Origin: Octopus sinensis
Lineage: Eukaryota
Assembly (NCBI RefSeq): GCF_006345805.1
Contig: NW_021823734.1
Location: 1 to 21,733, forward strand
Direction of reading: 5' to 3'
DNA: 21,733 nt
Shown here piece by piece: positions 204 through 19,025 of this stretch (the stretch's first letter is position 1; each line of letters starts with the position of its first letter). Position numbers and translations under genes: made by a program. The notes under the pieces were generated by a model, which was not told where the DNA came from, did no database searches, and saw only the letters and a list, made by a program, of their open reading frames with translations.

Positions 204-289
204 ATAATCATTTACAAAACAATTCTAAATTGCTTATAATCATGTTCATCATTTCCTTGATTGTCATCATTAACAAAGTAAATAACATC

Positions 290-442
290 ATCATTGTCAT
301 CATCATCTAACATCCCTGTTATTTTCTGGCATGGGCTGGACAGGAACCAAGGACTGCACTGTGCACAGATCCGTTCCATGAATCGATCTCACTATCTCGA
401 GAGTGTGAGCCTGACGATCTCACCACTGAGCCATGCACTTCC
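290..442 (-). mobile_element. Degenerate tRNA-derived SINE remnant: head joined to a (GAT)n-tailed 3' piece
   Basis: Minus strand from 442 reads GGAAGTGCATGGCTCAGTGG (A-box TGGCTCAGTGG) ... GAGATCGATTC (B-box-like, 380-390), then runs into a 3' segment ending in GATGATGAT-like repeats near 290-306. Confidence 0.6.
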
Positions 443-780: not shown

Positions 781-819
781 TACATACACACATACATACA
801 CACATACATACATACATAC

Positions 820-893
<74 letters not shown>

Positions 894-934
894 AATATAT
901 TATATATATATATATAATTTATATATATATATAT

Positions 935-1006
<72 letters not shown>

Positions 1007-1011
1007 ATATT

Positions 1012-1090
<79 letters not shown>

Positions 1091-1097
1091 TATATAG

Positions 1098-1179
<82 letters not shown>

Positions 1180-1288
1180 GGTCCCGGGTTGATCCGGGGC
1201 TTCCTGAAGATTTCTCTTGAATGAAACAGTACTAGTCCTGTAGAAGCTCCTTCTATATAATAAATATATATATATATATATATTATAT

Positions 1289-1340
<52 letters not shown>

Positions 1341-1346
1341 TATATT

Positions 1347-1399
<53 letters not shown>

Positions 1400-1453
1400 A
1401 TATATTTTATATATATATATAATATTTATATATATATAATATATTTATATATT

Positions 1454-1515
<62 letters not shown>

Positions 1516-1572
1516 ATTTATATATATATTTATATATTATATATATTTATATATATATATATATATATATAG

Positions 1573-1618
<46 letters not shown>

Positions 1619-1637
1619 TTATATATATTTATATATA

Positions 1638-1689
<52 letters not shown>

Positions 1690-1720
1690 ATATATATACA
1701 TATACACACACACACTTATA
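781..1720. repeat. Long imperfect (TA)n tract interrupted by an 89-bp non-repetitive block
   Basis: About 940 bp of TA with TTA/TAA variants. Begins with (TACA)n, ends with (CA)n. Confidence 0.95.
1177..1265. other. Mini-insertion made of two pieces of the 8623-9623 block
   Basis: 1177-1199 is the exact reverse complement of 9601-9623. 1199-1265 is an exact forward copy of 9488-9554. The pieces share 1 G at the join. Confidence 0.9.
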
Positions 1721-1764
1721 CATTTATAGCCTTGATTGTCATCATCAACAGAGTAAATAACATC

Positions 1765-1940
1765 ATCATCATTGTCGCCATCACCTAACATCCATGTTCC
1801 TTTCTGGCTTGGACTGGACAGGATCCAAGGACTGCACTCCGCTCAAACGTCTGCTTTGGTCTCCTATTTCTGGTTAGATGCCTTTCCTAACATCAACCAA
1901 CTCACAGCATGGGCTCGGTGCTTTTATCATACTACCCGAC
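1765..1940 (-). mobile_element. SINE/retroposon 3' fragment with (GAT)n tail
   Basis: Plus strand starts catcatcatcatt..., then ggactgcac...gatgcctttcctaacatcaacca. Homologous to 255-360. Resembles an octopus retroposon tail from recall only. Confidence 0.5.
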
Positions 1941-1970
1941 TATTGAAGTTGCCATCTCAATCTGCTTCAA

Positions 1971-2096
1971 CCTCCACCCCTCCCGATTCTACGGGCTTCA
2001 AACAGGATATCTACATGCTAGAAAAAGCAGCCAAATCTCACACAAACTATTTTTGGCTCATACGTACACAATCTGTATCGAATGCCTATGGGTTAT
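1971..2096 (+). repeat. Dispersed repeat fragment Y, copy 2
   Basis: Aligns to the reverse complement of 541-656. Its ctacatgctagaaaaagcagccaaatctc core also resembles 10860-10890. Confidence 0.75.
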
Positions 2097-2309
2097 TTCT
2101 ACACAAATATGACCCTCGATTTTGCCTCCTTTTAACTGGAAGAAAGGTTCATATTTTTAGTAAAATTTTTGACATATTGTGTACATGCTGATTATATTGG
2201 AATTCTTTTAGAAAAAGTTTTATCCTAGAGGTGGGGAGAATTTCAAAAAATTCCAATATCGGCATTTTTTGGACTAAGAAAGCTTTGATGAAGTAATGAA
2301 AGAAATATG

Positions 2310-5300
2310 CAATCAATCTACTAAGTCCTCTGAATGTCCTGAAAGAAGGACTGCGCTTGTTGCGAAGGAGCTTCAACGCTATGATCTTGACATTGTTGCT
2401 TTATCTGAGACAAAAACTTTCTTTCTACCATGCTTTGAAGGGCATTATAAGAAATATCCCTCGGCAGACAAAGTCATCGTACTGGGTGACTTTAATGCTA
2501 GAGTGGGTAGGGATTTTAACACATGGACTGTAATTGGAAAGCATGGGGTGGGGAAGTGTAATAGTAATGACATGCTTTTGCTGCACATGTGTGAAGAGCT
2601 GAGTCTGTGTGTTACCAATACCATGTTTCAACCAAAGAATAAGCTTAAGACTACATGGATGCACCCTGCATCTAAAGAATGGCATATTCTGGATTACATC
2701 CTAGTTAGGGTGCGTGACAGACAGGATGTGCAGTGTGATCGTGTTCTTCGTGGAGCTGAGTGTTGGACTGACCACCGCCTAGTACGTGCAACAGTAAAAG
2801 ACTGAATGTTGGTATAATAGTGTGAAGAGAACTTTACGAGAGGAAATGAATGCTGCAGATATTGGGGAAGATTGGCCGAACCTCAAAAAGTCAGTTTATG
2901 ATATAGGCAGGAAAGTTCTGGGATTGATACAAAGAAAGCATCAAGATTGGTTTAAAGAAAATGATGAACATATAGATGATTTATTGGCTGATAAAAGGCG
3001 TACTTTGTCACGCTATTTGTCAGCAAAGTCACAGGAAAGGGAAGTGTTGCATAGGGAACTCAAGGACGTAAAATCACGTGTGAGGCAAAGGCTCTCTCAG
3101 ATGAGGGATACGTGTTGGAGTAAGAAGGCTGACGAGATACAGGCGGCATCAGATTCCAATAACACAAAGCTGTTGTATGGTCTCTTGCGAGAAGTTTATG
3201 GGCCGACATCTTCCCTGATGACACCAATTCGAAGCAGGGATGGTAAAGAAGTTCTTCATGATTCACAAGGAATTCTGTGAAGGTGGCAAGAACACTTTGA
3301 TGAACTTTTGAATCAACAGTCTGTAGTTAGTGAGGATGTTCTCAATCTCATCCCTGGATTGCCTGTGAAGGCAGCACTCGCAGAACCACGAAAGTTGGAA
3401 GACGTTGCAATGGCTGTCTCAAGGTTGAATAATGGGAAGTCTCCGGGTATGGATGGCATACATGCGGAGTTGTTACAGTATGGTGATGAGAAACTTCTGC
3501 AGAAACTTCACTCTTTGTTTGGTAAGATATGGACTAGTGAATCTGTACGAGGACTGGAGAGATACAGTAATGGTGGAAGGGGAAGGGCAGCAGGAATGAT
3601 TGTGGTAATTATAGGAGAGTATCATTGCTGTCTGTTGTAGGAAAGGTTTTATGCATGGTACTTCTGGATCGTCTGCTGAAATCCGTTGCAGACTGTGTTC
3701 TTCAAGAAAGTCAATCTGGCTTTCGTGTGGGATGTGGCACTGCTGATATAATCTTTTCAGCTAGACAGCTTCAGGAGAAGTGTGGAACAGGGTCTGGATT
3801 TGTATCAGGTTTTTGTAGATCTGACAAAAGCCTTTGATACCGTCAATAGAAAAGCATTGTGGAAAGTCCTCCAGAAACGTGGGTGTCCTGAAAAGTTCCT
3901 TGCTTTGGTTAGGTCTTTTCATGAAGACATGAATGGTAGGGTGAATGTTAGAGGGAAAATGTCGGAGCCCATTGCAATACAAAATGGAAATAGGGGGATA
4001 TCCTGGCACCGACCCTATTTGCCATATATCTTGCGATGGTGTTCTGTATTGCATTCAGAAACTGCAGATACGGTGTTTACATCCATTATCGAACCTCTGG
4101 CAGCATATTTAATATCAGGCACTTTGCTGCGAAAACAAATGCATTTACCTCTATCATGAGAGACCTTTTGTATGCAGATGATTGTGATCTAGTAGCACAC
4201 ACAGAGATTGGTATGCAACACATTTTTAATGCATTCTCTGATGCTTGCACTGCCTTAGGATTGACAGTGAATCTCAAGAAAACTGTTGTCATGCATCAAT
4301 CTGCCCCTGGTAAGCAGTATAGTGTACCAAATATCTATGTGTATCTTAAACGACTTGATGTAGTTGATCAGTTTGTCTACTTGGGAAGCACTATTAATAG
4401 ATATAGCAATTTGGATGATGAAATTCCACATAGAATTAGGAAAGCAAGTGTTGCTTTCGGAAGGGTAGAAAAGCGCCTCTGGAGTCGGCGAGACATATGC
4501 AGAAAGACAAAGATAAAGGTGTACAAGGCATGTGTGCTCCCTTCTCTTCTCTATGCCTGCGAGACGTGAGTCACATATCGATACCACTTTAAACAACTGG
4601 AACGTTTCCATCAGATGTGTCTTAGACGGATCTATGGCATTAAGTGGAAGGACCGCATCAGTGATCTTGAAATATTGGAAGGCTCTCGGTGTGAAAGTGT
4701 AGAAGAGCTCTTGTGTTAAAGCGAAGGCTCAGATGGAGTGGTCATCTGGTCAGGATGAAGGATTCAAGGATGCCAAAACAGCTCTTTCATGGAGAGTTAG
4801 CTAAAGGAGAACAACCTCCACATAAACCAAAAGAGAGGTATAAGGACTTGCTGAAGGCTTCCTTAAAAGATGCTTGCATCTCTCCTGACACATGGGAAGG
4901 CATAGTTATTGATCGTAGCTGGGGGAGAAGGATTGTGTACGAGGGGACAGCCACTTTTGAGAAATCTCGAGTGGCACATAAGAAAGTAAGGAGGGATGTC
5001 AGGAAGCGCATCGCTGATACACTTCCAGATGGGAAGGGTCTTCCTATGATGCTGACATGCAGTGTCTGTGCAAGACCCTGCCTCAGAAAAGCTGGACTCA
5101 AGAGTCATCTTCGTAGTCATAAAGCGAGAAAGATGAGTGACAACCTGGCCACTGGTGGTGGTGTAACACACCATACAAATAATATCTGCCGGGCATGCAA
5201 AAGAGAGTGTAATTCGGCAGGAGGACTTAAAAAACATGCACAGGTACATGAAGCCCAGTTACAACTACAGCCGGCTATTACCGGTAAAGGTTTTAGTTGC

Positions 5301-5353
5301 CAATTCTGTACAAGACTGGGCTAAAAAGTCACATTCGATCACACCGCCAGTAA
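2310..5353 (+). mobile_element. Degraded RTE-clade (RTE/BovB-like) non-LTR retrotransposon: APE endonuclease, reverse transcriptase and C-terminal zinc fingers, broken by stops, frameshifts and deletions
   Basis: APE motifs: PERRTALVAKEL..YDLDIVALSET, VLGDFNARVG, NTMF..K.K.TWMHP.SK.WH.LDYIL, TDHRLV. RT motifs: KSPGMDGIHAE, QESQSGFR, QLQEKC, FVDLTKAFDTVNR, LLYADD, YLGSTI, LLYACET. RTE-typical RRLRWSGHLVRM.D.RMPKQLFHGEL follows. Spread over at least 7 ORF fragments; EN domain internally deleted near 2417. Confidence 0.93.
5058..5353 (+). other. Three C2H2 zinc-finger motifs at the RTE ORF C-terminus (third is frameshifted)
   Basis: F1 5058-5120 CSVCARPCLRKAGLKSHLRSH. F2 5187-5249 CRACKRECNSAGGLKKHAQVH. 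F3 5298-5344 CQFCTR/shift/GLKSHIRSH, then RQ and a stop at 5351-5353. Confidence 0.8.
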
Positions 5354-5605
5354 CAGTTAAGCTTGAAATATGTTACAAAAGGAAAATATAAAATACACGT
5401 GAAAATTTAAGGGGAGAATAAAAAGAAATCAACGAAAATGCACATTGTAAATAAAAAAGAAAAAGCTTTTTATGAAAGGTAACGACAGATATATACTTTT
5501 AGATAGGATGAGGTAGTAATAAAAGTCATTATTACGAGATGATTAAAAAGTCAGAAAGCAAAGCATACCATGGTTTCGTCATAAGCTATTCGTTCCCCCG
5601 CCCTG

Positions 5606-5643
5606 TATATATATATATACATATATATATATATGTATATATA

Positions 5644-5717
<74 letters not shown>

Positions 5718-5765
5718 CATGTATATAACTACGTATATTATATGCATATATATATATATGCATAC
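5606..5765. repeat. (TA)n microsatellite
   Basis: Imperfect TA run. Confidence 0.95.
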
Positions 5766-5929
5766 ATATGCAGTCAGATCTAGTCAAGTAATTTGCCTCA
5801 TTTGTTTGTTAAATCTAGTTGGAACCGATAGATAAGAGAAAATCATTTGGTCATTATATTTGATTGACTGTAGTTGTTGATTTTTTCGTAGAAGCTATTG
5901 GCTTGAAGCAGGGTTAGGTGTTTATGTAG

Positions 5930-6128
5930 TTTTCTGATGGTAGTAGGGACAAACAAAGGCACACAATCGTACACATATATACACTTCTGTACGACGGGCT
6001 TTTTTCAGTTTCCGATACGAAATCGAATCATAAGGATTTAGTCGACCCGGGACGATAGAAGAAAACACTTGTCTAAGCTGCCACGCGGTGGGACTGCACC
6101 AGGAACCGTGTGGTTGGTAAGCAGGCAA
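5930..6128 (-). mobile_element. Diverged partial tRNA-derived SINE, same family as 6920-7350
   Basis: Reverse complement reads gcttaccaaccacacggttcctggtgcagtcccaccgcgtggcagcttagacaagtg...ggaaactgaaaaaagcccgtcgta and aligns to 6949-7085. Confidence 0.8.
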
Positions 6129-6148
6129 CCCCCCATTGAGATATATTT

Positions 6149-6188
<40 letters not shown>

Positions 6189-6193
6189 TGATA

Positions 6194-6337
6194 GGCGTAG
6201 GAATGGCTGTGTGATAAGTAGCTTCCCTACGAAACGCAGTGTTCTTGGTTCAGTCCCACTGCATGGTATCTTGGGCTAGTGTCTTCTACTATAGACTCGT
6301 GCCGACCAATCCTTGTGAGTGGAATTGATAGGCGGAG

Positions 6338-6374
<37 letters not shown>

Positions 6375-6605
6375 AAACATATATATATATACATATATGT
6401 GTGGGGGGGGGCTATGTATATATATATATACATACACGTTTGTATGTCTGTTTATCCCTCCAACACCGCTTGACAACCAGTGCTGGTGTGTTCATGTCCC
6501 CGTAACTTAGCGTTTCGTCATAAGAGAAAATAGATTAAATACTAGGCCTACAAAAAATAAGTATTGGGTTCGAATTTCGCGAATAAAGGCGCTGCTGCGG
6601 CATGG
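6194..6605 (+). mobile_element. tRNA-derived SINE, diverged and 3'-truncated at GCATGG, with internal microsatellite
   Basis: GGCGTAGGAATGGCTGTGTG head and GGTTCAGTCCC B-box-like motif. Colinear with 6920-7312. Confidence 0.85.
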
Positions 6606-6606
6606 A

Positions 6607-6674
<68 letters not shown>

Positions 6675-6919
6675 CCTTCGTGAGCTGTCTAGAGTAAACA
6701 TTATCTGAGAGAAATTTTCTTTAAGTAGTAGAAATGGCTAAAAAAATTTTTTTTGGCTGCTATTTCTACTAAGTCCAGTATGTGGCAAAGTAATTTATTT
6801 TACTAAGCCCTAATTATATAATGTAATATTTTGAATTCGCCTTAAATGGTCCTTTTACTTACTGAACACTTGGTGAAATTGATTAATTAATTTTACCCTC
6901 AATTGTTGATATATATATA

Positions 6920-7350
6920 GGCGCAGGAGTGGCTGTGTGGTAAGTAGCTTGCTAACCAACCACATGGTTCTGGGTTCAATCCCACTGCGTGGCATCTTGG
7001 GCAAGTGTCTTCTGCTATAGCCCCGGGCCGACCAATGCCTTGTGAGTGGATTTGGTAGACGGAAACTGAAAGAAGCCTGTCGTATATATATATATATATA
7101 TATAATATATATATATATATAAATGTATGTGTGTGTGTGTGTTTGTGTGTCTGTGTTTGTCCCCTAGCATTGCTTGACAACCGATGCTGGTATGTGTTTA
7201 CGTCCCCGTCACATAGCGGTTCGGCAAAAGAGACCGATATAATAAGTACTGGGCTTACAAAAAATAAGTCTCGGGGTCGATTTGCTCGAATAAAGGCGGT
7301 GCTCCAGCATGGCCGCAGTCAAATGACTGAAACAAGTAAAAGAGAGAGTA
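6920..7350 (+). mobile_element. Full-length tRNA-derived SINE with internal (TA)n(TG)n
   Basis: A-box-like TGGCTGTGTGG 6930-6940, B-box GGTTCAATCCC 6973-6983, 3' end ...gactgaaacaagtaaaagagagagta. Matches a highly abundant octopus SINE from recall. Confidence 0.88.
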
Positions 7351-7400
<50 letters not shown>

Positions 7401-7402
<2 letters not shown>

Positions 7403-7516
7403 CCGATAGTTTAAATACTAGGCCTACAAAGTATAAGTCCTGGTGTCGATTTGCACGAATAAAGGCATTGCTCCACCATGGCCGCAGTCAAATGATTGAA
7501 AAATTAAGTGTATAAA
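7401..7516 (+). mobile_element. SINE 3'-end fragment, U1 copy
   Basis: ccgatag...aaatactaggcctacaaag...ccatggccgcagtcaaatgattgaaa aligns to 7233-7340. Confidence 0.8.
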
Positions 7517-7895
7517 ACAGAAAATAACCAGAAAAGTTTATATTCTCTTAACTACATAATTAAGGGAGATAACTGAAAATCAACTTTTAGAATTACTTCC
7601 CTTCAAATATTAATAGAAGACATGACAGTTTAACATGTAGGCGCGTTTGTTTTTGATGCGAAGGGCACGCTTGCATTCCTGCAAGAAGAGACAAACATAC
7701 ACGTGCAAATTTTCTGCTGTTCACTTTAACAAATAAACATTATAATTTACATTTAATTACACCCGAAAACTATGTAAAGTACTCACCCTATCCAGTACTA
7801 CCCTTTGGACATGATCGGGTTTTCTTTTGTTTTAGATAGTATATATGCGTATGTGGGTATAGACACGTCTATATGTATGAATGCATGCATTTATG

Positions 7896-7945
<50 letters not shown>

Positions 7946-7949
7946 AAAC

Positions 7950-8395
7950 AAATCGCTTGCCGTGAATTACCGTCGAATCTCACTCACCTCTCATATCATT
8001 AAGGTATTTGAGAGAGTGCTGAGATCGCGTATGACTCACTTCCTTGAGAGTCATATGCTGAACTCCAAACAGCATGGATTCCGTAATGGAAGAGATTGCC
8101 TGACGCAGCTACTGCATCATTTTGATGTCATTTTGAGAGCCTTGGGAGAGGGCTCCAACACTGATGTCATCTTCCTTGATTTCAGCAAGGCCTTTGACAG
8201 GGTTGATCATAAGATCCTTTTGAGAAAGCTGTCCAATATTGGTGTCACTGGAAAGCTGCTGCAGTGGATCAAGTGCTTCCTGTCTAACAGAACCCAACAT
8301 GTTGTAGTCGAAGGAGGCAAATCCAGCCCAGCCAAAGTCAGCAGTGGTGTCCCACAAGGCACTGTGTTGGACCCACTTCTCTTCATCATCTACAT
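7950..8395 (+). mobile_element. CR1-group LINE RT fragment in U1, 5'-truncated and 3'-deleted
   Basis: [47 protein letters not shown]. Ends abruptly at catctacat, fused to (AT)n. Confidence 0.9.
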
Positions 8396-8429
<34 letters not shown>

Positions 8430-8622
8430 ATATATGTATGTATATATGTATTTATGTATATATGTAAGTATGTATATATATATATCTATATATACATGCA
8501 TATATCTATATATATATACATGCATATAACTATATATATATACATACATACATACATGTATATATTTATGTATATATACATGTATGTATGCACATATATA
8601 TATATATATATACATGTATATA
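8396..8622. repeat. Compound TA/TATG/CATA microsatellite (U1)
   Basis: Same patterned tract as 14813-15270, 16395-16820 and 20462-20830. Confidence 0.9.
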
Positions 8623-9144
8623 GAAGGAGCTTCTACAGGACTAGTACTGTTTCATTCAAGAGAAATCTTCAGGAAGCTATTTAACAAGAATTGTATTAGC
8701 ATTTATACATTTAGGCAGGTTTAAAGGAGAGGTGGTGGGGGACTTTTTTGGGGGTAGGCATAGCGCAAAATATCATACTTGGGGGAGTGGTCAAGGAGTC
8801 AGTGGTAAGTTAGATGAAAGAATAGATAAATAAAAAAATAAAAAATAAAAAATAAAAAAATAAAAAAATAAAAAAATAGAATGTATGTAGATGTTTGTAT
8901 GTATGAATATAACGCGTGCGTACGTGTATGTGTATGAGTGTACGAATGGGTGTATGTACGTGCTAATGAGTGTGCGTGCGGGAACGAGTACTTGCCTTCT
9001 ATAGACAGACAATTTGGACATGCTGCCATCGCCAGGATCCTGCTCTAGCGATCAAAGATAACAAAAGTAATATGAAGATAATAAAATTAAATTAGGGATG
9101 GGCCTGTATTGGATGTGTATATATATATATATATATATATGTGT

Positions 9145-9189
<45 letters not shown>

Positions 9190-9548
9190 ATGTGTGTATG
9201 TGTAGGAATGTATAGGCACACATGTGTACGTATGTGTGTGTGTATGTATATGTGTTTATGTATGTATGTGCACACATTTTATTTTTTTATTTTTTATTTT
9301 TTTATTTTTTTATTTTTTATTTTTTATTTTTTTATTTATCTATTCTTTCATCTAACTTACCACTGACTCCTTGACCACTCCCCCAAGTATGATATTTTGC
9401 GCTATGCCTACCCCCAAAAAAGTCCCCCACCACCTCTCCTTTAAACCTGCCTAAATGTATAAATGCTAATACAATTCTTGTTAAATAGCTTCCTGAAGAT
9501 TTCTCTTGAATGAAACAGTACTAGTCCTGTAGAAGCTCCTTCTATATA
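8617..9548. repeat. Perfect 259-bp inverted repeat (arms 8617-8875 and 9290-9548, 414-bp spacer)
   Basis: Checked base by base in 10-mers with no mismatch; paired coordinates sum to 18165 at both ends. Confidence 0.95.
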
Positions 9549-10302
9549 ATAAATTAATTTTACTCTGCTATGTATTGAGTACCTTACTTACTGTGGTTAA
9601 CCCCGGATCAACCCGGGACCTACATATATACATGTATATATATATTTGTATGTATGAGTATGAGCGTATGTATCAGTATGTATGAGAAGGAGAAATTTTT
9701 TTACAAGAATATTGTTTACTTTAATATTTGTGTCTTTGTGAAATAGATGTTGGTTGGATTATGTTCTTCATTATCTTTGTATTAATGGCGGTGGAGAAGG
9801 ATGGCGTTCCAGTGTCTTTTATTTATTTGAACTCATAAAATTATGTGTAATTAAAATTACTTCATCAGTAAATGAAGGATTTAAAAATATCCATCCTCCC
9901 CCCCATCCCCATCCACTCTAACACTCCAATATAAATATGTTTAATAGGTAATTCCAGCCTGAAGAATTCAATGTTATATAATAATGATAAGTCATTAAAG
10001 GCATCATTATGAAAACATATTCAAAATTTGGTTATTAATAACCAAATAGTAGAAACCGATTGACAAGATGAGACATTTCAAATAGATTTTTTTATAATGA
10101 ACTGCTGTCAAATGAAAATAAAGGAAATGTTAACACAGGAGATAATGACTGCGAACGATCTGCTAATTAAAGTGCAATTAGCAACATGGGTGATGGTTTA
10201 ATTAGCAACACTCACTGGTACAGAAAAACAGGGATTACCTCCCCTTGCCTTTCAACTCCATCCAAGCATGTTCCATGCATTAAATACCTGCCAGTTGTTA
10301 CT

Positions 10303-10437
10303 TGGGGATTCGACAGGATTGTTAGCGGATTGCTTAGAATGTATTGAAGTAGTCATTCTGGCATTCTGTGCCCTGAGTTCAAATCCCATCAACGTCAACT
10401 TTGCTTTTTCATTCTTTCAATACAACATCAGGTACTG
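10303..10437 (+). mobile_element. Old tRNA-derived SINE 5' fragment (U1 copy)
   Basis: B-box GAGTTCAAATCC at 10375-10386 followed by gtcaactttgctttttcattctttc. Resembles a second octopus SINE family from recall. Confidence 0.55.
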
Positions 10438-10460
10438 AAAGGAATACATCATTATATTTT

Positions 10461-10471
10461 GCACTCTCTCA

Positions 10472-10517
<46 letters not shown>

Positions 10518-10518
10518 C
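10461..10518. repeat. (CT)n microsatellite (U1)
   Basis: Imperfect TC run, with homologues at 17637-17705 and 21644-21726. Confidence 0.95.
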
Positions 10519-10859
10519 TTTGAAAGATTTCCACTGTGGTTTGACAGAGAGAGGGGTTAGCTACATCATGTTTAAAATACCCAAATATGAGTGTGAGGAA
10601 GGCGTCCTTATGATTCTGACAACATATGATGACTGAAGACAGGGAATGGATATGAATAGACCCCCTCATCAATAGATATACCCAATACTCAATCCTATTG
10701 AACAACCACAGTTATCTGTGGTAGTAGTAAGTACATCAGATAAAAATGCTATCTGATGCGTCTACTGAAAATCTAAGCAGGGTCCTGTCAAACTGTTCCT
10801 GTCTATTTATTTGCACAAGCTAATAATGAACCAATGAGAGATCGTGTATGTTGTGGTTA

Positions 10860-11035
10860 GGTCTGTTAGATGTAGCAGCCACATCTGCCTCGTATCTTAA
10901 AACAAGGACATGTGAACTCACATGGTTATATGGTCATTGCAAATAGGAAAAAGACAGGATGGTCACATCTAGAATGCTTTTGATCTCAGGCCTGCACAGT
11001 CAGGGTTGACCAAGGGCTAAGCAATAAATTTGTTC
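10860..11035 (+). mobile_element. Diverged SINE-like 3' fragment (U1 copy)
   Basis: gttagatgtagcagccacatc...aagacaggatggtcac...cagggttgaccaagggctaagcaataa. Core resembles repeat Y; family assignment from recall only. Confidence 0.4.
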
Positions 11036-11043
11036 ACAAGGGA

Positions 11044-11210
11044 TGTATGTATGTTTATCCCTCCAACACCGATTGACAACCGGTGCTATTGTGTTCATGT
11101 CCCCGTAACTTAGCGTTTCGTCAAAAAGAGAAAGATAGATTAAATACTAGGCCCACAAAGAATAAGTCCTGGTTTCGATTTTCTCGAATAAAGGCGCTGC
11201 TGCCGCATGG
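11044..11210 (+). mobile_element. SINE 3' half at the start of U2
   Basis: Aligns to 6441-6605 with the same truncation point GCATGG|AATATATA. Confidence 0.85.
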
Positions 11211-11211
11211 A

Positions 11212-11280
<69 letters not shown>

Positions 11281-11394
11281 CCGATAGTTGAAATACTAGG
11301 CCTACAAAGTATAAGTCCTGGTGTCGATTTACACGAATAAAGGCATTGCTCCACCATGGCCGCAGTCAAATGATTGAAAAATTAAGTGTATAAA
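11281..11394 (+). mobile_element. SINE 3'-end fragment, U2 copy
   Basis: Near-identical to 7403-7516. Confidence 0.8.
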
Positions 11395-11798
11395 ACAGAA
11401 AATAACCAGAAAAGTTTATATTCTCTTAACTACATAATTAAGGGAGATAACTGAAAATCAACTTTTAGAATTACTTCCCTTCAAATATTAATAGAAGACA
11501 TGACAGTTTAAGATGTAGGTGCGTTTGTTTTTCGCATGCGAAGGGCACGCTTGCATTCCTGCAAGAAGAGACAAACATACACGTGCAAATTTTCTGCTGT
11601 TCACTTTAACAAATAAACATTATAATTTACATTTAATTACACCCGAAAACTATGTAAAGTACTCACCCTATCCAGTACTACCCTTTGGACATGATCGGGT
11701 TTTCTTTTGTTTTAGATAGTATATATGCGTATGTGGGTATAGACACGTCTATATGTATGAATGCATGCATTTATGTATATAAATATATATATTTATAT

Positions 11799-12643
11799 AT
11801 ACTACAAAATTAGAAAATGGAGAAACATACTTAAAATCAATAAAACATCAACTATCAGATGATACCTAATCAATCCTTTATATTTTTTATTTTTATATTT
11901 TTTATATTTTTATACTTATATGTATATGGAAAAATAATTTTTTGACAATTATAACAAATTTAATTCTCTGAAGAGGCCGTGGGGCATCCTTGTTAATGCC
12001 TCATTTATACCTGCCTTTATGGCTTATAGGTTAAATGAGGTATGACTGCCCTTGCTGCCGAAAGAGCTGTCAGATATGATTTAATTACATATTATATTTG
12101 AAATTTTATACATATACTAGCAGTATCGCCCGGCGTTGCTCGGGTTTGAAAAGGGAAATAACTATAAAGCATTTTTAGAGAGTTATAGCCAAAAAATAGC
12201 AAAAACAAAATGGGAAATAAATGATGGTAAATTTTTTTTTGATAGTTAAAAAGTTCGAGTTGCGTCCCCTGTGGTTTGTGTTTCTGATTGTCGACCCCAT
12301 GTTGAATTTACCGATCTTTTTCAGAACTGGGGGAAATTTTCAAAATTTTCGCTGCGTTAGTTTTGAATTTTGACATTGGACTATGTGTGTGTCAAGTTTC
12401 ATCAGAATCAGGTGAAAGCCGTGGTCAGGGTGAGCGTACAAGTAAACAGACACACAGAAACACGCACAGACAAACTGCCGTTTATATATAGAGAGATTTC
12501 CTTGTCTATTTACATTTACTGTATATTTTGTATAATGCCTTTACTGATATGTAATGGTGTAATAATGTATTGATTGGGTATCATCTGATAGTTGATGTTT
12601 TATTGATTTAAGTATGTTTCTCCATTTTCTAATTTTGTAGTAT
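11799..12643. repeat. Inverted repeat with ~75-bp arms (11799-11874 and 12569-12643)
   Basis: actacaaaattagaaaatgg...gatacctaatcaat versus attgattgggtatc...ttctaattttgtagt; one substitution and one 1-bp indel. Confidence 0.92.
12117..12496 (-). mobile_element. Non-autonomous Helitron-like element, 380 bp
   Basis: Minus strand begins TCTCTCTATATATAAA and ends CTAG, inserted between A and T. GC-rich hairpin CCCG-agcaacgc-CGGG (12129-12144) lies 8 nt before CTAG. Subterminal (GACA/CA)-type microsatellite near the 5' end. No coding capacity. Confidence 0.8.
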
Positions 12644-12812
12644 TAATTTACGGTAATATTATTACCTTTACCCATATAATACAATAGATGAACTGATTGT
12701 TTGGCAATTTTTAACATCTATGTATTAGTCTTGTTGGGTACCTATCTAGCAGTATATTGGATATATGTTATCCCATGGTGGGTTGAATTTTCAACCCCTA
12801 TCTCATTTTATA

Positions 12813-12857
<45 letters not shown>

Positions 12858-12861
12858 AAAC

Positions 12862-14328
12862 AAATCGCTTGCCGTGAATTACCGTCCAATCTCACTCACC
12901 TCTCATATCATTAAGGTATTTGAGAGAGTGCTGAGATCGCGTATGACTCACTTCCTCGGCAGTCATAATATGCTGAACTCCAACCAGCATGGATTCCGTA
13001 ATGGAAGAGATTGCCTGACGCAGCTACTGCATCATTTTGATGTCATTTTGAGAGCCTTGGGAGAGGGCTCCAACACTGATGTCATCTTCCTTGATTTCAG
13101 CAAGGCCTTTGACAGGGTTGATCATAAGATCCTTTTGAGAAAGCTGTCCAATATTTGTGTCACTGGAAAGCTGCTGCAGTGGATCAAGTGCTTCATGTCT
13201 AACAGAACCCAACATGTTGTAGTCGAAGGAGTCAAATCCAGCCAAGCCAAAGTCAGCAGTGGTGTCCCACACGGCACTGTGTTGGACCCACTTCTCTTCA
13301 TCATCTACATTAATGATATTACTGACACCATCAAATACAATAACATCAGAACTTTCGCTGATGATTCCAAGCTCCAGAAGGTCATCAATGGCGTGGATGA
13401 CCGAATAAACCTTCAGTCAGACCTACTGGCTGTTCTCCAATGGGCGGAAAAGAATAACATGTTACTAAACGAAGACAAATTCGAACTGATCCACTTTGGA
13501 AGGGAGGACGCTCTAAAACTCCCATACTCCCTTCCTTCTGGAGAAATTCTCATGGCGTCTAACAACATCAGAGACTTGGGAGTAACAGTGGACAACAACA
13601 TAAGCTGGGCTACACATATAAGCAGCAAAGTTGATATGGCCCGCAGAATGTGTTCCTGGATTCTCAGAACCTTCCAGTCGAGATATTCCCACACCATTAT
13701 CCTTCTCTTCTCCACTTTTGCCCGACCCCACCTTGAATACTGCTGTCCACTGTAGTCTCCCTACACAAAACAAAATATTATGAGAATTGAAGCTCCCCAA
13801 CGGTCAATCACAAAAAAGATAGATGGCATGTCAGACCTTGACTACTAGGGTAGACTAGAGAAACTGAAACTGTATTCACTCCAACGACGCCGTGAACGCT
13901 ACATTAACTGTATGATGTAGAAAATATTCCATCAGCACTGTCCGAATGATGTTGGCATCACCTTCAAAATACATCCAAGGCTTGGACCACGTGCCATCCG
14001 TCCACAACAAAAATCTAAATCGCACCACATAACGACAATACGGCACAATTATTTCATCTCAATTGGAACCGCTCTCTTCAACATTACACCAGGACACGTC
14101 AAAACAGACACTGACCACAGAAAATTCAAGAAGTCTTTGGACAAATTCCTTCAAACAGTCCCGGACAAACCACCCACACCCGGATATGTCTCCGCAAACA
14201 ATAACTCTCTGCTCGAATGGGCCTTGGTGCCCAAATCCTGAACTGAAAGACTTCGCCAGGTGGTGCTATTAAGTTAGACATGGCCTGGGCCAATACTGGC
14301 CAAAACCTTTCTAAGTTATTCTAAGTTA
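12862..14328 (+). mobile_element. 5'-truncated CR1-group LINE (RT to 3' end) in U2, inactivated
   Basis: 293-aa ORF with [39 protein letters not shown], then YSLQRRRERY. Premature TAG stops near 13753, 13846 and 13918. 3' end is (TTCTAAGTTA)x2 at 14309-14328, the short tandem-repeat tail typical of CR1-group LINEs. Exact clade (CR1/L2/Crack) unresolved. Confidence 0.9.
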
Positions 14329-14351
14329 TATAAATATATATATATATATAT

Positions 14352-14812
14352 CGAACTAGAATCATTGAGGAAGCAAATACAAAGTCAACCGCATGTCATT
14401 TCATAATTCGAACATTTAATTATAGAATAAACATATAATCCGCAAGATGGAAGAAAATTCATATGTACAGCACGTAATAATAATAATATGGTATGGTGCG
14501 AGAAAAATTCTTATCTTTAAAACTTAGAATTAATATTCTAGCGATTCAAAGAGAATACATTTATAAAAGGACGTACAAAGTAAAATATAATATAAGCAAT
14601 ATATAAAAATATATAGGTATATAAAAATATAGACATATAAAAATATATAAAACATATATAAATATATGTACATATAGGAGCATATAAAAAATATAATATA
14701 TATATATCGTGTAAATAAAGTAAAATAAGGTTCATCGTTTAGAAATCTTAATCAGGTAAAGTAAGCCTTATATATAAGATGGAAATCATGGTTACTTATC
14801 CCTATGGCCATT
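14352..14812. other. U2-specific ~460-bp non-coding block within the post-LINE (TA)n tract
   Basis: Absent at the homologous positions in U3 (~16400-16470) and U4 (~20462-20510). Contains an A-rich degenerate microsatellite at 14581-14705. Confidence 0.8.
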
Positions 14813-15075
14813 ATGTATATATGTATATATACATGTATGTATATATGTATGTATATATGTATGTATATATGTATGTATGTATATATCTATATATATCTAT
14901 ATATATATGCATGCATATAACTATGTATATATGTATGTATATATGTATGTATGTATATATCTATATATATCTATATATATATGCATGCATATAACTATGT
15001 ATATATGTATGTATATATATACACATGTATGTATATATGTATGTATATATGTATTTATGTATATATGTATGTATG

Positions 15076-15106
<31 letters not shown>

Positions 15107-15200
15107 TATATATATACATGCATATAACTCTATATATATATATATATATATATACATACATACATACATACATGTATATATTTATGTATATATGTATGTA

Positions 15201-15255
<55 letters not shown>

Positions 15256-15270
15256 TATATATTATATATG
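14813..15270. repeat. Compound TA/TATG/CATA microsatellite (U2) with internal sub-duplications
   Basis: catgcatataact motif occurs three times. Confidence 0.9.
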
Positions 15271-15445
15271 TATGTATGAGTATAAGCGTATGTATGAGTA
15301 TGTACGAGAAGGAGCAATTTTTTTTCAAGAATATTGTTTACTTTAATATTTGTGTCTTTGTGAAATAGATGTTGGTTGGATTATGTTCTTCATTATCTTT
15401 GTATTAATGGCGGTGGAGAAGGATGGCGTTCCAGTGTCTTTCAAT

Positions 15446-16392
15446 GGTCATCAATGGCGTGGATGACCGAATAAGCCTTCAGTCAGACCTACTGGCTGTT
15501 CTCCAATGGGCGGAAAAGAATAACATGTTACTAAACGAAGACAAATTCGAACTGATCCACTTTGGAAGGGAGGACGCTCTAAAACTCCCATACTCCCTTC
15601 CTTCTGGAGAAATTCTCATGGCGTCTAACAACATCAGAGACTTGGGAGTAACAGTGGACAACAACATAAGCTGGGCTACACATATAAGCAGCAAAGTTGA
15701 TATGGCCCGCAGAATGTGTTCCTGGATTCTCAGAACTTTCCAGTCGAGATATTCCCACACCATTATCCTTCTCTTCTCCACTTTTGCCCGACCCCACCTT
15801 GAATACTGCTGTTCACTGTGGTCTACCTACACAAAACAAAATATTATGAGAATTGAAGCTCCCCAACGGTCAATCACAAAAAAGATAGATGGCATGTCAG
15901 ACCTTGACTACTAGTATAGACTAGTGAAACTGAAACTGTTTTCACTCCAACGACGCCGTGAACGCTACATTATCTGTATGATGTGGAAAATATTCCATCA
16001 GCACGGTCCGAATGATGTTGGCATCACCTTCAAAATACATCCAAGGCTTGGACCACGTGCCATCCGTCCACAACAAAAATCTAAATCGCATCTCATAACA
16101 ACAATACGGCACAATCATTTCATCTCAATTGGAACCGCTCTCTTCAACATTACACCAGGACACGTCAAAACAGAAACTGACCACACAAAGTTCAAGAAGT
16201 CTTTGGACAAATTCCTTCAAACAGTCCCGGACAAACCATCCACACCAAGATATGTCTCCGCAAACATTAACTGTCAGCTCGAATGGGCATTGGTGCCCAA
16301 ATCCTGAATTGAAAGACTTCGCCAGGTGGTGCTATTAAGTTAGACATGGCCTGGGCCAATACTGGCCAAAACCTTTCTAAGTTATTCTAAGT

Positions 16393-16394
<2 letters not shown>
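15446..16394 (+). mobile_element. CR1-group LINE 3' part (U3)
   Basis: Homologous to 13380-14328; ends in (TTCTAAGTTA)x2. Confidence 0.9.
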
Positions 16395-16483
<89 letters not shown>

Positions 16484-16578
16484 ATATATGTATGTATATA
16501 CGTATATATATGTGTGTATATATATATCTATATATATCTTTATATATATGCATGCATATAACTATGTATATATGTATG

Positions 16579-16617
<39 letters not shown>

Positions 16618-16820
16618 GTATGTATATATGTATGTATATATGTATTTATGTATATATGTATGTATGTATATATATATATCTATATATATATACATGCATA
16701 TAACTATATATATATATATATACATACATACATACATGTATATATTTATGTATATATACATGTATGTATGCATATATATATATAATATATATATATATAT
16801 ATACATGTATATATATATTT
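16395..16820. repeat. Compound microsatellite (U3)
   Basis: About 75 bp of pure TA followed by the patterned TATG/CATA tract. Confidence 0.9.
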
Positions 16821-17475
16821 GTATGTATGAGTATAAGCGTATGTATGAGTATGTATGAGAAGGAGCAATTTTTTTTCAAGAATATTGTTTACTTTAATAT
16901 TTGTGTCTTTGTGAAATAGATGTTGGTTGGATTATGTTCTTCATTATCTTTGTATTAATGGCGGTGGAGAAGGATGGCGTTCCAGTGTCTTTTGTTTATT
17001 TTAACTCATAAAATTATGTGTAATTAAAATTACTTCATCCGTAAATGAAGGATTTAAAAATATCCTTCCTTCCCCCCCATCCGCATCCACTCTAATATTC
17101 CAATATAAATATGTTTAATAGGTAATTCCAGCCTGAAGAATTCAATGTTATATAATAATGATAAGTCATTAAAGGCATCATTATGAAAACATATTCAAAA
17201 TTTGGTTATTAATAACCAAATAGTAGAAACCGATTGACAAGATGAGACATTTCAAATAGATTTTTTATAATGAACTGCTGTCAAATGTAAATAAAGGAAA
17301 TGTTAACACAGGAGATAATGACTGCGAACGATCTGCTAATTAAAGTGCAATTAGCAACATGGGTGATGGTTTAATTAGTAACACTCACTGGTACAGAAAA
17401 CCAGGGATTACCTCCCCTTGCCTTTCAACTCCATCCAAGCATGTTCCATGCATTAAATACCTGCCAGTTGTTACT

Positions 17476-17610
17476 TGGGGATTCGACAGGATTGTTAGCG
17501 GATTGCTTAGAATGTATTGAAGTAGTCATTCTGGCATTCTGTGCCCTGAGTTCAAATCCCATCAACGCCAAATTTGCTTTTTCATTCTTTCAATACAACA
17601 TCAGGTACTG
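17476..17610 (+). mobile_element. Old SINE 5' fragment (U3 copy)
   Basis: Homologous to 10303-10437. Confidence 0.55.
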
Positions 17611-17636
17611 AAAGGAATACATCATTATATTTTGCA

Positions 17637-17705
17637 CTCTCTCATTCTCTCTCTCTCTTTCTCTCTCTCACTCTTCTCTCTCTCTCTCTCTCTATCTCTC
17701 TCTTT
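17637..17705. repeat. (CT)n microsatellite (U3)
   Basis: Imperfect TC run. Confidence 0.95.
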
Positions 17706-18049
17706 CCATGAAAGATATCTACTGTGGTTTGACAGAGAGATGGGTTAGCTACATCATGTTTTAAATACACAAATATGAGTGTGAGGAAGGCATCCTTATG
17801 ATTCTGAACACATATGATGACTGAAGACAGGGAATGGATATGAATAGACCCCCTCATCAATAGATATACCCAATACTCAATCCTATTGAACAACCACAGT
17901 TATCTGTGGTAGTAGTAAGTACATCAGATAAAAATGCTATCTGATGCGTCTACTGAAAATCTAAGCAGGGTCCTGTCAAACTGTTCCTGTCTATTTATTT
18001 GCACAAGCTAATAATGAACCAATGAGAGATCGTGTACGTGGTGGTTAGG

Positions 18050-18215: not shown

Positions 18216-18231
18216 ATTTGTTCACAAGGGA

Positions 18232-18398: not shown

Positions 18399-18479
<81 letters not shown>

Positions 18480-18993: not shown

Positions 18994-19025
<32 letters not shown>

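What the first reader, a model, noticed from the sequence alone, without database searches (positions are those of the whole stretch)
1177..14812. TA-rich tracts act as recurrent DNA-capture sites, with inserts copied from one template strand by both ends
SEEN: the array provides empty-site controls. Each extra block is present in only one copy and sits in a TA-rich tract: 6674-7350, 8623-9623, 11801-~12815 and 14352-14812, plus 1177-1265 outside the array. In the three whose source is visible (1177, 8623, 11801), the top strand entering from the left flank and the bottom strand entering from the right flank read the same donor sequence in the same direction, giving an inversion junction inside the insert. 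Entry points overlap TA microhomology (TATATA 8617-8622/9543-9548; ATA 11799-11801/12641-12643). KNOWN: this geometry resembles twin priming in L1 5' inversions, but classical twin priming gives little overlap and a poly(A) tail, whereas these inserts overlap by 75-259 bp, lack a tail and are not LINE sequence. Two-ended SDSA from a duplex donor gives no inversion. Long (TA)n forms cruciforms and is breakage-prone. INFERENCE: breaks in TA tracts are patched by double priming on a single-stranded template (RNA through a LINE RT, or ssDNA through a Pol-theta-like route). I do not know of this being described as a recurrent process in molluscs.
Basis: partly seen in the sequence, partly recalled or inferred. 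Interest (0 to 1): 0.75.

Follow-up and report, generated by a model that had tools for sequence, protein, structure and literature searches.

The report
Penelope-type retroelement insertions in TA repeats
The odd "inverted on both sides, extra tail on one side" DNA blocks inside TA repeats of this octopus sequence are real, but they look like the known insertion footprint of Penelope-like retroelements, not a new DNA-repair process.

Summary
A ~4.0-kb tandem array supplies empty-site controls. Four unit-specific blocks, plus 1177-1265, all lie in TA tracts. 8623-9623 has perfect 259-bp inverted arms, and 11801-12812 has 83-bp arms at 95%.

The repair interpretation is only partly right. Block 8623-9623 is flanked by an exact 17-bp target-site duplication, so it entered as one unit at a staggered cut. 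Its sequence belongs to a dispersed repeat family. Block 1177-1265 and an independent copy in an Octopus sinensis contig (L001 17583-17729) share the same two outer ends and differ only at their inner ends.

The layout is: inverted 5'-truncated copy, longer copy, tail at one end only, AT-rich or (TA)n target. This is the published signature of Penelope-like elements (PLEs). A purified PLE enzyme cuts and extends both DNA strands and starts reverse transcription at two internal RNA sites, and the tail is the stretch between them.

It is probably retroelement integration, not break patching by LINE RT or Pol theta, and it has already been described in invertebrates.

PLE membership rests on structure alone. 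No PLE ORF, ribozyme or autonomous partner could be tested. Blocks 14352-14811 and 6674-6898 remain unclassified, and 6909-7349 is an ordinary SINE.

The parts
8606..8622 (.). Left copy of the 17-bp target-site duplication ATATATACATGTATATA flanking block A
   Evidence: Identical to 9624-9640. Present once in the empty units at ~16794 and ~20805. No tandem duplication of 11 bp or more containing C or G occurs at about 1450 positions of the TA tracts. The last 6 nt (TATATA) could instead belong to the insert, so the duplication is 11-17 bp.
8623..8875 (-). Block A, inverted 5'-truncated copy without tail; reads as cDNA primed from the top strand at the inner start site
   Evidence: 100% reverse complement of 9290-9548. 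Its outer end coincides with the template's TATATA. Its inner end lies at an (A7T)n run.
8876..9548 (+). Block A, longer (main) copy: 8876-9289 is unique sequence plus microsatellites, and 9290-9548 is the right arm
   Evidence: 8876-9289 is not palindromic and has no counterpart in the other units or in L001 beyond simple repeats. No ORF or Pfam signal.
9549..9623 (+). Block A one-sided tail (65-75 nt), ending ...CCCCGGATCAACCCGGGACCTAC; interpreted as the stretch between the two reverse-transcription start sites
   Evidence: Present only at the right end. Conserved at 94% in L001 17582-17661, and its last 23 nt recur in block E. It has a small 5-bp GC hairpin that is not significant (z = -1.4).
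9624..9640 (.). Right copy of the 17-bp target-site duplication
1177..1199 (-). Block E, copy started at the outer site: reverse complement of the last 23 nt of the tail (9601-9623)
   Evidence: 100% identity. Has the same ATATG|TAGGTCCC boundary as A and as L001 Y.
1199..1265 (+). Block E, copy started at the inner site: identical to 9488-9554, ending ...CTCCTTCTATATAATAAAT before (AT)n
   Evidence: 100% identity. Its end is identical to the nucleotide with L001 Y.
11801..11881 (-). Block B, inverted 5'-truncated copy
   Evidence: 79 of 83 positions identical to the reverse complement of 12562-12643. Abuts the TA tract on its left.
11882..12643 (+). Block B, main copy (non-coding), starting with a T-rich microsatellite
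   Evidence: No similarity to block A, to the LINEs or to the SINE.
12644..12812 (+). Block B one-sided tail (169 nt) with hairpin GGGTTGAAttttCAACCC near its end
   Evidence: Absent from the empty units. Fold z = -2.3. No significant similarity to the block A tail.
14352..14811 (.). Block C: unit-specific 460-bp AT-rich insert at the start of the LINE's TA tail; unclassified
   Evidence: Absent from the units at 16417 and 20484. No inverted repeat, no ORF, no copy in L001.
6674..6898 (.). Block D-left: unit-specific 225-bp insert in a (TA)n run; unclassified
   Evidence: Only a short A7/T8-centred palindrome. No relatives found.
6909..7349 (+). Ordinary tRNA-type octopus SINE (head, internal TA/TG microsatellite, 3' domain) inserted in the same (TA)n run
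   Evidence: 83% identical to the SINE at 6181-6605 and 92% to L001 15760-15960.
8394..8622 (.). TA/TATG tract that received block A; it is the 3' microsatellite tail region of the CR1-like LINE fragment
   Evidence: RT ORFs at 7962-8393, 12874-13755 and 19042-19575 match RVT_1.
804..1704 (.). 900-bp (TA)n tract that received block E

Best explanation
Blocks A (8623-9623), B (11801-12812) and E (1177-1265) are insertions of non-coding retroelement RNAs into (TA)n tracts. The mechanism is Penelope-like (PLE-type) target-primed reverse transcription.

Proposed steps:
- An element-encoded GIY-YIG endonuclease/RT complex cuts both strands of AT-rich DNA with a stagger.
- Each free 3' end primes cDNA on the element's RNA.
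- One strand starts at an outer site (for family A, ...GGGACCTAC at 9623). The other starts at an inner site 65-75 nt upstream (...CTTCTATATA(ATAAAT), 9548-9558).
- Both cDNAs stop at variable points, and host repair joins them.

The product is: an inverted 5'-truncated copy, then a longer copy, then a tail at one end only, all bounded by a target-site duplication.

The TA tracts are themselves the 3' microsatellite tails of a CR1-like LINE and of SINEs. They therefore act as both the product and the preferred target of retroelement insertion.

Shown: the anatomy, the duplication, the fixed outer and variable inner ends, and the multi-locus family. Inferred: the RNA intermediate and the identity of the enzyme.
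For: 1. Clean empty sites, with all insertions in TA tracts.

2. An exact 17-bp duplication flanks the whole arm-spacer-arm'-tail block A. It is single-copy in two empty units, and no comparable tandem duplicate occurs at about 1450 tract positions. The composite therefore entered in one event at a staggered cut.

3. The family is dispersed. L001 (O. sinensis VCDQ01000580.1) 17583-17729 lies in an unrelated TA tract. It carries the tail at 94% and the arm end at 95%, in the same inverted arrangement.

4. In A, E and the L001 copy, the two outer ends are the same to the nucleotide or within about 10 nt. The inner ends differ: copies of 748/253, 23/71 and ~83/68 nt. This is the pattern of 5' truncation on both strands.

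5. Unrelated sequences show the same architecture: block B, and L001 12886-13191, which has arms matching at 94 of 99 positions and a 68-nt one-sided tail. The layout therefore belongs to the mechanism and not to one sequence family.

6. Arm identities of 100%, 95% and 95% fit arms that were identical at insertion.

7. Literature. PLE insertions often have an inverted 5'-truncated copy, a tail at only one end, and (TA)n targets (PMC8557442; PMC8969392). A purified PLE protein cleaves and extends both strands, prefers AT-rich DNA and starts reverse transcription at two internal RNA sites, and the tail is the stretch between them (PMC11167929). PLEs are abundant and recently active in Octopus vulgaris (PMC13282606).
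Against: - There is no sequence link to any PLE. No RT/GIY-YIG ORF occurs in the window or in L001.
- No hammerhead ribozyme was found.
- No pseudo-LTR or partial tandem was seen.
- No autonomous partner could be searched.
- The tails are 65-75, 169 and 68 nt, against the published 30-40 bp.
- Only one clear target-site duplication exists; the other flanks are pure TA and uninformative.
- Only three copies of family A were available, from 42 kb of octopus DNA.
- A copy of the template without an inverted partner was never seen. A built-in inverted repeat that is inherited with the element is therefore not excluded.
Confidence: 0.55

Rival explanations
1. The blocks are non-autonomous DNA transposons whose inverted arms are built in, such as Helentron-associated (HINE/DINE-1-like) or foldback/MITE-like elements. 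These have a 5' arm, a subterminal inverted arm, central microsatellites and a 3' tail with a small hairpin. On this view, E and the L001 copy are internal-deletion derivatives that keep both termini.
For: The layout resembles HINEs: a 5' subterminal repeat, a 3' subterminal repeat 38-60 bp from the end, a 3' palindrome and central microsatellites (PMC4067079). All 3 of 3 family-A copies have the inverted arrangement and shared termini. The tails of A and B contain short GC hairpins. Internal deletions that keep both termini are typical of DNA-transposon derivatives.
Against: The 17-bp (11-17 bp) duplication around A contradicts Helitron/Helentron insertion, which leaves no target-site duplication. 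It is also longer than the duplications made by known cut-and-paste superfamilies. The arms are 83-259 bp, not 12-15 bp. The targets are TA, not TT or T-rich. The hairpins are not statistically notable (z = -1.4 and -2.3; none in L001). E and the L001 copy lack the second arm entirely. The tail makes the ends asymmetric, unlike MITE or foldback terminal repeats.
Confidence: 0.17
2. This is twin priming by an APE-type LINE, for example the CR1-like LINE of this array, whose 3' end is ...TATATAAAT(AT)n. SINE-like RNAs with (UA)n tails are reverse-transcribed from the first nick. The second-strand nick in the TA tract primes at an internal UAUAUA stretch of the same RNA.
For: The 11-17 bp duplication is in the L1-like range. 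The TATATA microhomology lies at the inner start site of A. The window is full of TA-tailed LINE and SINE copies. The end of E and the L001 copy...TATATAATAAAT(AT)n, loosely resembles the LINE terminus ...GTTATATAAAT(AT)n.
Against: Classical twin priming gives adjoining segments with little overlap. Here the inverted copy lies wholly within the range of the main copy (259-bp overlap). 3 of 3 copies are inverted, whereas by my recollection L1 inversions are a minority. E and the L001 copy share an inner start with no microhomology to the (AT)n flank. No significant similarity exists between the inserts and either LINE's 3' region. The ordinary SINE at 6909-7349 has no inverted partner. The neighbouring inverted SINE pair is only 73% alike, so it represents two separate events.
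Confidence: 0.15
3. One reading: spontaneous breaks in fragile or cruciform-forming (TA)n are patched by host repair. Either Pol-theta-type synthesis or an RT borrowed in trans copies whatever single-stranded nucleic acid is at hand from both broken ends.
For: The geometry fits. TA microhomology lies at some entry points. The L001 12886-13191 structure has a 47-bp central filler copied (46 of 47) from 400 bp upstream, with 2-4 nt microhomology at both joints. That is typical of templated repair synthesis at the final joining step.
Against: The same donor, with the same two precise start points, was used at three unlinked loci. A 17-bp duplication implies defined staggered nicks. The inserts reach 1 kb, far beyond the usual tens of bp for Pol-theta templated insertions (established knowledge, not tested here). 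The donors are not flanking or random sequence.
Confidence: 0.06
4. Assembly or library artefact: fold-back or chimeric reads create false palindromes.
For: The perfect 259-bp arms of block A are the kind of feature that fold-back chimeras can produce. No reads were available to check this.
Against: A has a 414-bp non-palindromic spacer, a one-sided tail, correct unit flanks and a target-site duplication. The arms of B and of the L001 structure have diverged by 5%. The same junction type occurs in another contig.
Confidence: 0.03

Closest known systems
Penelope-like elements (PLEs; Penelope/Poseidon, Neptune, Naiad clades): insertion architecture and in vitro mechanism
   Same: An inverted 5'-truncated copy next to a longer copy. 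An extra tail at one end only. Strong preference for AT-rich DNA or (TA)n microsatellites. Heavy 5' truncation. Both target strands used as primers, with two alternative internal reverse-transcription start sites that explain the tail (PMC8557442, PMC8969392, PMC11167929).
   Different: The inserts here are non-coding, with no RT/GIY-YIG, hammerhead or pseudo-LTR. The tails are 65-169 nt, not 30-40 bp. A clear 17-bp duplication is visible, which is seldom discernible for (TA)n-targeting Naiads. Very short 'abortive' products occur (89 and 147 bp). The link to a PLE is structural only.
L1 twin priming (5' inversions)
   Same: Two target 3' ends prime on one RNA. The result is an inversion junction inside the insert, a target-site duplication of about 15 bp, and microhomology at an internal priming site.
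   Different: There is no poly(A). The inverted copy duplicates 83-259 bp of the main copy instead of continuing it. The tail is missing from the inverted copy. All observed copies are inverted.
Helentron-associated interspersed elements (HINE / DINE-1-like), known in bivalves
   Same: Non-coding. A 5' repeat with a subterminal 3' inverted partner, followed by a tail with a small palindrome. Central microsatellites. Deletion derivatives (PMC4067079; PMC7492417, listed).
   Different: HINE repeats are 12-15 bp, targets are TT or T-rich, and no target-site duplication forms. Here the arms are 83-259 bp, the targets are TA, and there is a 17-bp duplication.
Foldback elements and TA-targeting MITEs (Tc1/mariner-derived)
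   Same: Long inverted arms, flanking TA, no coding capacity.
   Different: The ends are asymmetric because of the one-sided tail. Family members lack one arm entirely. The duplication is far longer than TA (MITEs) or 9 bp (foldback elements; from memory, not tested here).

Membership tests
PLE-type insertion (Penelope-like retroelement) | Inverted 5'-truncated copy immediately adjacent to a longer copy, forming inverted repeats around the unit | tested here: met
   A: 8623-8875 against 9290-9548, 259 of 259. B: 79 of 83. L001 12886-13123: 94 of 99. In each case the inverted copy is the shorter one.
PLE-type insertion (Penelope-like retroelement) | Extension ('tail') at only one end of the insertion, corresponding to the stretch between two reverse-transcription start sites | tested here: met
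   Tails at 9549-9623, 12644-12812 and L001 13124-13191 occur at one end only. Across A, E and the L001 copy, the two start points are constant. Their lengths (65-169 nt) exceed the published 30-40 bp.
PLE-type insertion (Penelope-like retroelement) | Insertion into AT-rich DNA or (TA)n microsatellites | tested here: met
   All sites lie in TA tracts, confirmed against paralogous empty sites.
PLE-type insertion (Penelope-like retroelement) | Fixed 3' (outer) ends with variable 5' (inner) truncation among copies | tested here: met
   Three copies of family A. The sample is small.
PLE-type insertion (Penelope-like retroelement) | Pseudo-LTR or partial tandem organisation | tested here: not met
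   No internal direct repeats in A or B. This may simply reflect strong 5' truncation.
PLE-type insertion (Penelope-like retroelement) | Hammerhead ribozyme motif (canonical clades; absent in Naiads) | tested here: not met
   No Rfam hammerhead hit. My motif scan with helix checks found none in the window or L001.
PLE-type insertion (Penelope-like retroelement) | Telomerase-like RT plus GIY-YIG endonuclease ORF, or sequence identity of the insert to the pLTR/3' end of such an element | not testable with these tools
   The inserts have no ORFs. The only RTs in the window are APE-type LINEs. No octopus repeat library or genome was reachable.
HINE / Helentron non-autonomous element | 12-15 bp subterminal inverted repeats, 2-4 nt from the 5' end and 38-60 bp from the 3' end | tested here: not met
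   The arms are 83-259 bp. The 3' offset is 65-169 bp.
HINE / Helentron non-autonomous element | Insertion at TT or T-rich sites without a target-site duplication | tested here: not met
   The targets are TA tracts. An exact 17-bp duplication flanks A.
HINE / Helentron non-autonomous element | [quoted passage not shown] | tested here: inconclusive
   Hairpins are present in the tails of A and B but not significant. None in the L001 tail.
L1-type twin priming | Poly(A) or LINE 3' tail at one end, with the inverted and direct segments being adjoining parts of the RNA and overlapping little | tested here: not met
   No poly(A). The overlap is 83-259 bp. The inverted copy lacks the terminal 65-169 nt.
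Tc1/mariner-type MITE or foldback element | Inverted repeats at both termini, flanked by a TA (or short fixed-length) duplication | tested here: not met
   The right arm is subterminal, with the tail outside it. E and the L001 copy have one arm only. The duplication is 11-17 bp.

The most novel reading that the evidence does not exclude
Octopus genomes may carry several unrelated families of short, non-coding RNAs that are mobilised in trans by Penelope-like machinery into (TA)n tracts. These would act as 'SINEs of PLEs', distinct from hammerhead retrozymes. Their insertions, including 89-147-bp abortive products, would preserve an in vivo record of both-strand priming from two start sites, with a measurable 17-bp stagger.
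Probability: 0.15. Interest if true: 0.6.

Novelty: new member of a known kind. Interest (0 to 1): 0.3.

Why it matters
If the assignment holds, the window gives natural footprints that match a mechanism so far shown only in vitro for one lizard PLE. Those footprints are extension of both target strands, two reverse-transcription start sites, and a tail between them. The window also adds a stagger length (11-17 bp), which is normally invisible for (TA)n-targeting elements. It is recovered here only because a tandem array supplies empty sites.

The window also shows how TA microsatellites in octopus become self-reinforcing nests. LINE and SINE tails create them, and other retroelements then target them.

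For annotation, such arm-spacer-arm'-tail blocks should not be called MITEs, foldback elements or assembly errors. This is not a new class of process.

Tried and rejected
1. Finding more copies through the protein collections failed. Ten junction-spanning ORFs and a 62-aa arm translation are not in the collection, and one window ORF lookup failed.

2. Exact-pattern scans of metagenome and viral contigs for the family-A head gave 0 hits.

3. Sampling more octopus DNA through RT homologues gave only one O. sinensis locus (L001). L002 is a 786-bp fragment, and L003-L006 belong to other organisms.

4. I thought the tails of A, B, C, D-left and L001 looked alike by eye. Shuffle-controlled local alignments show no significant similarity among them or to the LINE or SINE 3' ends. 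Rejected.

5. A hammerhead-like string in the arm (CTGAAGA...GAAAC...GTC) fails the helix I register and has no Rfam support. Rejected.

6. A canonical Helitron (5' TC, 3' CTRR, A|T target) does not fit the ends.

7. The head-to-head SINE pair 5990-6129 / 6181-6336 looked like a further example. The two copies are only 73% alike, less than either is to other copies, so they are two separate old insertions.

8. I considered block A as two independent insertions. This is rejected because neither arm has its own duplication, while the composite does.

9. Rfam hits to mir-297 and similar families are artefacts of the TA repeats.

Full report
**Context**

The window is octopus DNA.
- Its CR1-like LINE fragment recurs at 96% identity in Octopus sinensis contig VCDQ01000580.1 (L001).
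- Its tRNA-type SINE recurs there at 92%.
- The window holds a frameshifted APE+RT LINE at 2296-5324.
- From about 6441 onward it holds a tandem array with a 4011-bp unit, reference copy 16794-20805.
- Each unit contains a 5'-truncated CR1-like LINE (RT ORFs at 7962, 12874, 19042). The LINE's 3' end, ...GTTATATAAAT, runs into a 370-470-bp TA/TATG tract.
- Each unit also has two shorter TA runs: one at a SINE tail and one just 5' of the LINE.

The TA tracts are therefore retroelement tails or targets, not anonymous microsatellites.

**Check of the observation**

Flank-by-flank comparison with the paralogous units confirms four unit-specific blocks, each inside a TA tract:
- 6674-7349
- 8623-9623
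- 11801-~12812
- 14352-14811

Block 1177-1265 lies in a 900-bp (TA)n tract outside the array. TA tracts make up about 11% of a unit. The chance of 4 of 4 insertions landing in them is about 2e-4. No other insertion of 200 bp or more distinguishes the units.

The inverted geometry is real:
- Arms 8617-8875 and 9290-9548 match at 259 of 259 positions, with a 414-bp non-palindromic spacer.
- Arms 11799-11881 and 12562-12643 match at 79 of 83 positions.
- 1177-1199 is the reverse complement of 9601-9623, and 1199-1265 equals 9488-9554, both at 100%.

Block 6674-7349 is composite: an unknown 225-bp piece plus an ordinary SINE.

1. Block 8623-9623 is flanked by an exact 17-bp direct duplication, ATATATACATGTATATA (8606-8622 = 9624-9640).
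   - This string occurs once in the empty units at 16794 and 20805.
   - No tandem duplicate of 11 bp or more containing C or G occurs at any of about 1450 positions in the TA tracts.
   - Because the last TATATA could belong to the insert, the duplication is 11-17 bp.
   - The whole arm-spacer-arm'-tail block therefore arrived in one event at a staggered cut. Neither arm has its own duplication.

2. The sequence is a dispersed repeat.
   - L001 17583-17729 lies in an unrelated TA tract. It reads GTAGGTCCCGGGTTGATTCGGGGTTAACC...TTAATTTAT-(11 nt)-TCCTGAAGATTTC...CTCCTTCTATATAATAAAT(AT)n.
   - This is the tail (94% identity) followed by the arm end in the opposite orientation (95%).
   - Alignments A1 and A2 show that block A, block E and this copy share one outer boundary, (AT)nG|TAGGTCCC..., which is the complement of ...GGGACCTAC.
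   - They share a second outer boundary, ...CTCCTTCTATATA(ATAAAT)|. This is identical to the nucleotide in E and L001 and 10 nt shorter in A.
   - Only the inner ends differ. The copy started at the first boundary is 748, 23 and ~83 nt long. The copy started at the second is 253, 71 and 68 nt long.

3. The layout recurs in unrelated sequence.
   - Block B has an 81-bp inverted copy, a 762-bp main copy and a 169-nt tail.
   - L001 12886-13191 has 99-bp arms matching at 94 of 99 positions, a 68-nt one-sided tail, and TA tracts on both sides.
   - Shuffle-controlled alignments show no similarity between these families or to the LINE and SINE ends.
   - The architecture is therefore a property of the insertion process.

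**Mechanism**

Take the + strand of 8876-9623 as the template (T).
- The top strand leaving the left flank is a complement of T, started at 9548-9558.
- The bottom strand leaving the right flank is a complement of T, started at 9623.
- Each is attached to one copy of the duplicated target.

This is target-primed synthesis from both nicked strands on one kind of single-stranded template, with two alternative start sites 65-75 nt apart. The tail is the stretch between them.

This matches what is published for Penelope-like elements.
- Insertions are strongly 5'-truncated.
[quoted passage not shown] - (TA)n is the preferred target of Naiad PLEs, which dominate many invertebrate genomes (PMC8557442; PMC8969392).
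[quoted passage not shown] It prefers AT-rich DNA and starts reverse transcription at two internal RNA sites that delimit the genomic tail (PMC11167929).
- PLEs are numerous and recently active in O. vulgaris (PMC13282606).

I therefore read A, B and E as PLE-type insertions of non-coding RNAs. These are either non-autonomous elements or the untranslated 3' parts of PLEs.

The arm identities (100%, 95%, 95%) fit arms that were identical at insertion and have aged since. B inserted after the unit duplication, and the units differ by about 4%, which is compatible with its 5% arm divergence.

**Limits**

- The PLE assignment is structural only.
- The inserts have no ORFs.
- There is no hammerhead motif, although Naiads lack it too.
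- There is no pseudo-LTR.
- No GIY-YIG/RT element occurs in the window or in L001.
- I could not reach an octopus genome or repeat library.
- The tails are longer than the published 30-40 bp.
- Only one duplication is readable.
- Only three family-A copies were seen, all with the inverted arrangement. An inherited, built-in inverted repeat is therefore not excluded.

**Rivals**

- **HINE/Helentron-like or foldback DNA element.** This would explain the shared termini and the deletion-derivative look. It conflicts with the 17-bp duplication, the arm lengths, the TA targets and the copies that have only one arm.
- **APE-LINE twin priming.** This fits the duplication length and the TATATA microhomology. 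It does not fit the large overlap, the tail-less inverted copy, the shared start site without microhomology in E and L001, or the lack of similarity to the LINE 3' ends.
This is hard to reconcile with one donor used from the same two positions at three unlinked loci, and with a defined stagger.
- **Assembly artefact.** This is unlikely given the non-palindromic spacer, the duplication, the 5%-diverged arms in B and L001, and recurrence in another contig.

**Unclassified blocks**

Blocks 14352-14811 and 6674-6898 are genuine unit-specific insertions in TA tracts. They have no inverted repeat, ORF or relative in the data at hand. 6909-7349 is a plain SINE insertion. These show that TA tracts attract more than one kind of insertion.

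**Verdict**

- The double-priming geometry is right.
- The proposed agents (LINE RT or Pol theta patching of breaks) and the novelty claim are not supported.
- The finding is best filed as new, unannotated members of a known kind of insertion.
- It has modest added value: an in vivo footprint, with measurable stagger, of a mechanism recently shown in vitro.

Noticed in passing
L001 12983-13028 versus L001 12585-12631: The centre of the O. sinensis hairpin-like insertion is a 47-bp filler. It matches sequence about 400 bp upstream at 46 of 47 positions, in direct orientation, with 2-4 nt of microhomology at both joints. It looks like a locally templated patch made when the two inner ends were joined.
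   Followed up: partly
window 255-367 and 545-656 versus 1730-1845 and 1974-2085: Two copies of another repeat flank the 900-bp TA tract. Their proximal segments are direct (85%), but their distal segments are inverted relative to each other (79%). This may be a 5' inversion in one copy, or a chance juxtaposition of fragments. The intervening sequences do not align.
   Followed up: partly
window 5990-6129 (-) and 6181-6336 (+): A head-to-head pair of tRNA-type SINE heads is separated by a CA/TA microsatellite. The two are only 73% alike, less than either is to other copies, so they are independent old insertions and not a same-event inversion.
   Followed up: yes
window 8385-8400 versus 13305-13320: In the first array unit the LINE reading frame (...PLLFIIY) runs straight into the TA tract at 8393/8394. 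About 0.9-1 kb of LINE 3' sequence present in the other units is missing. The junction lies at ATCTACAT|A, suggesting a microhomology deletion into the TA tail.
   Followed up: partly
window 15241-16417 (junction 15441-15446): A partial array unit lacks the equivalent of about 9820-13380. Its deletion junction (GTGTCTTT|CAAT|GGTCATCAATGG) is not in a TA tract, so not all rearrangements here are TA-associated.
   Followed up: partly
window 14812-15277, 16393-16818, 20460-20829: The long TA/TATG tracts have a higher-order period of about 74 bp. They produce dozens of sub-threshold Rfam hits to mir-297, mir-3149, mir-466 and mir-1277. These are low-complexity artefacts, not miRNA genes.
   Followed up: partly
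window 10026-10047, 17200-17221, 21211-21232: A perfect 22-bp palindrome, ATTTGGTTATTAATAACCAAAT, occurs once per array unit at the same position. Its significance is unknown.
   Followed up: no
window 2296-5324: A second, unrelated LINE carries an APE endonuclease, an RT and a C-terminal C2H2 zinc-finger region. It is broken by frameshifts and ends in a TA tract at 5606-5759. Its closest relatives in the protein collection are 55-60% identical, on large ENA contigs of another organism.
   Followed up: partly
window 6438 (left edge of the array): The leftmost array unit begins inside the 3' domain of a complete SINE (6181-6605), next to that SINE's internal microsatellite. The tandem duplication breakpoint may therefore also lie at a simple repeat.
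   Followed up: no
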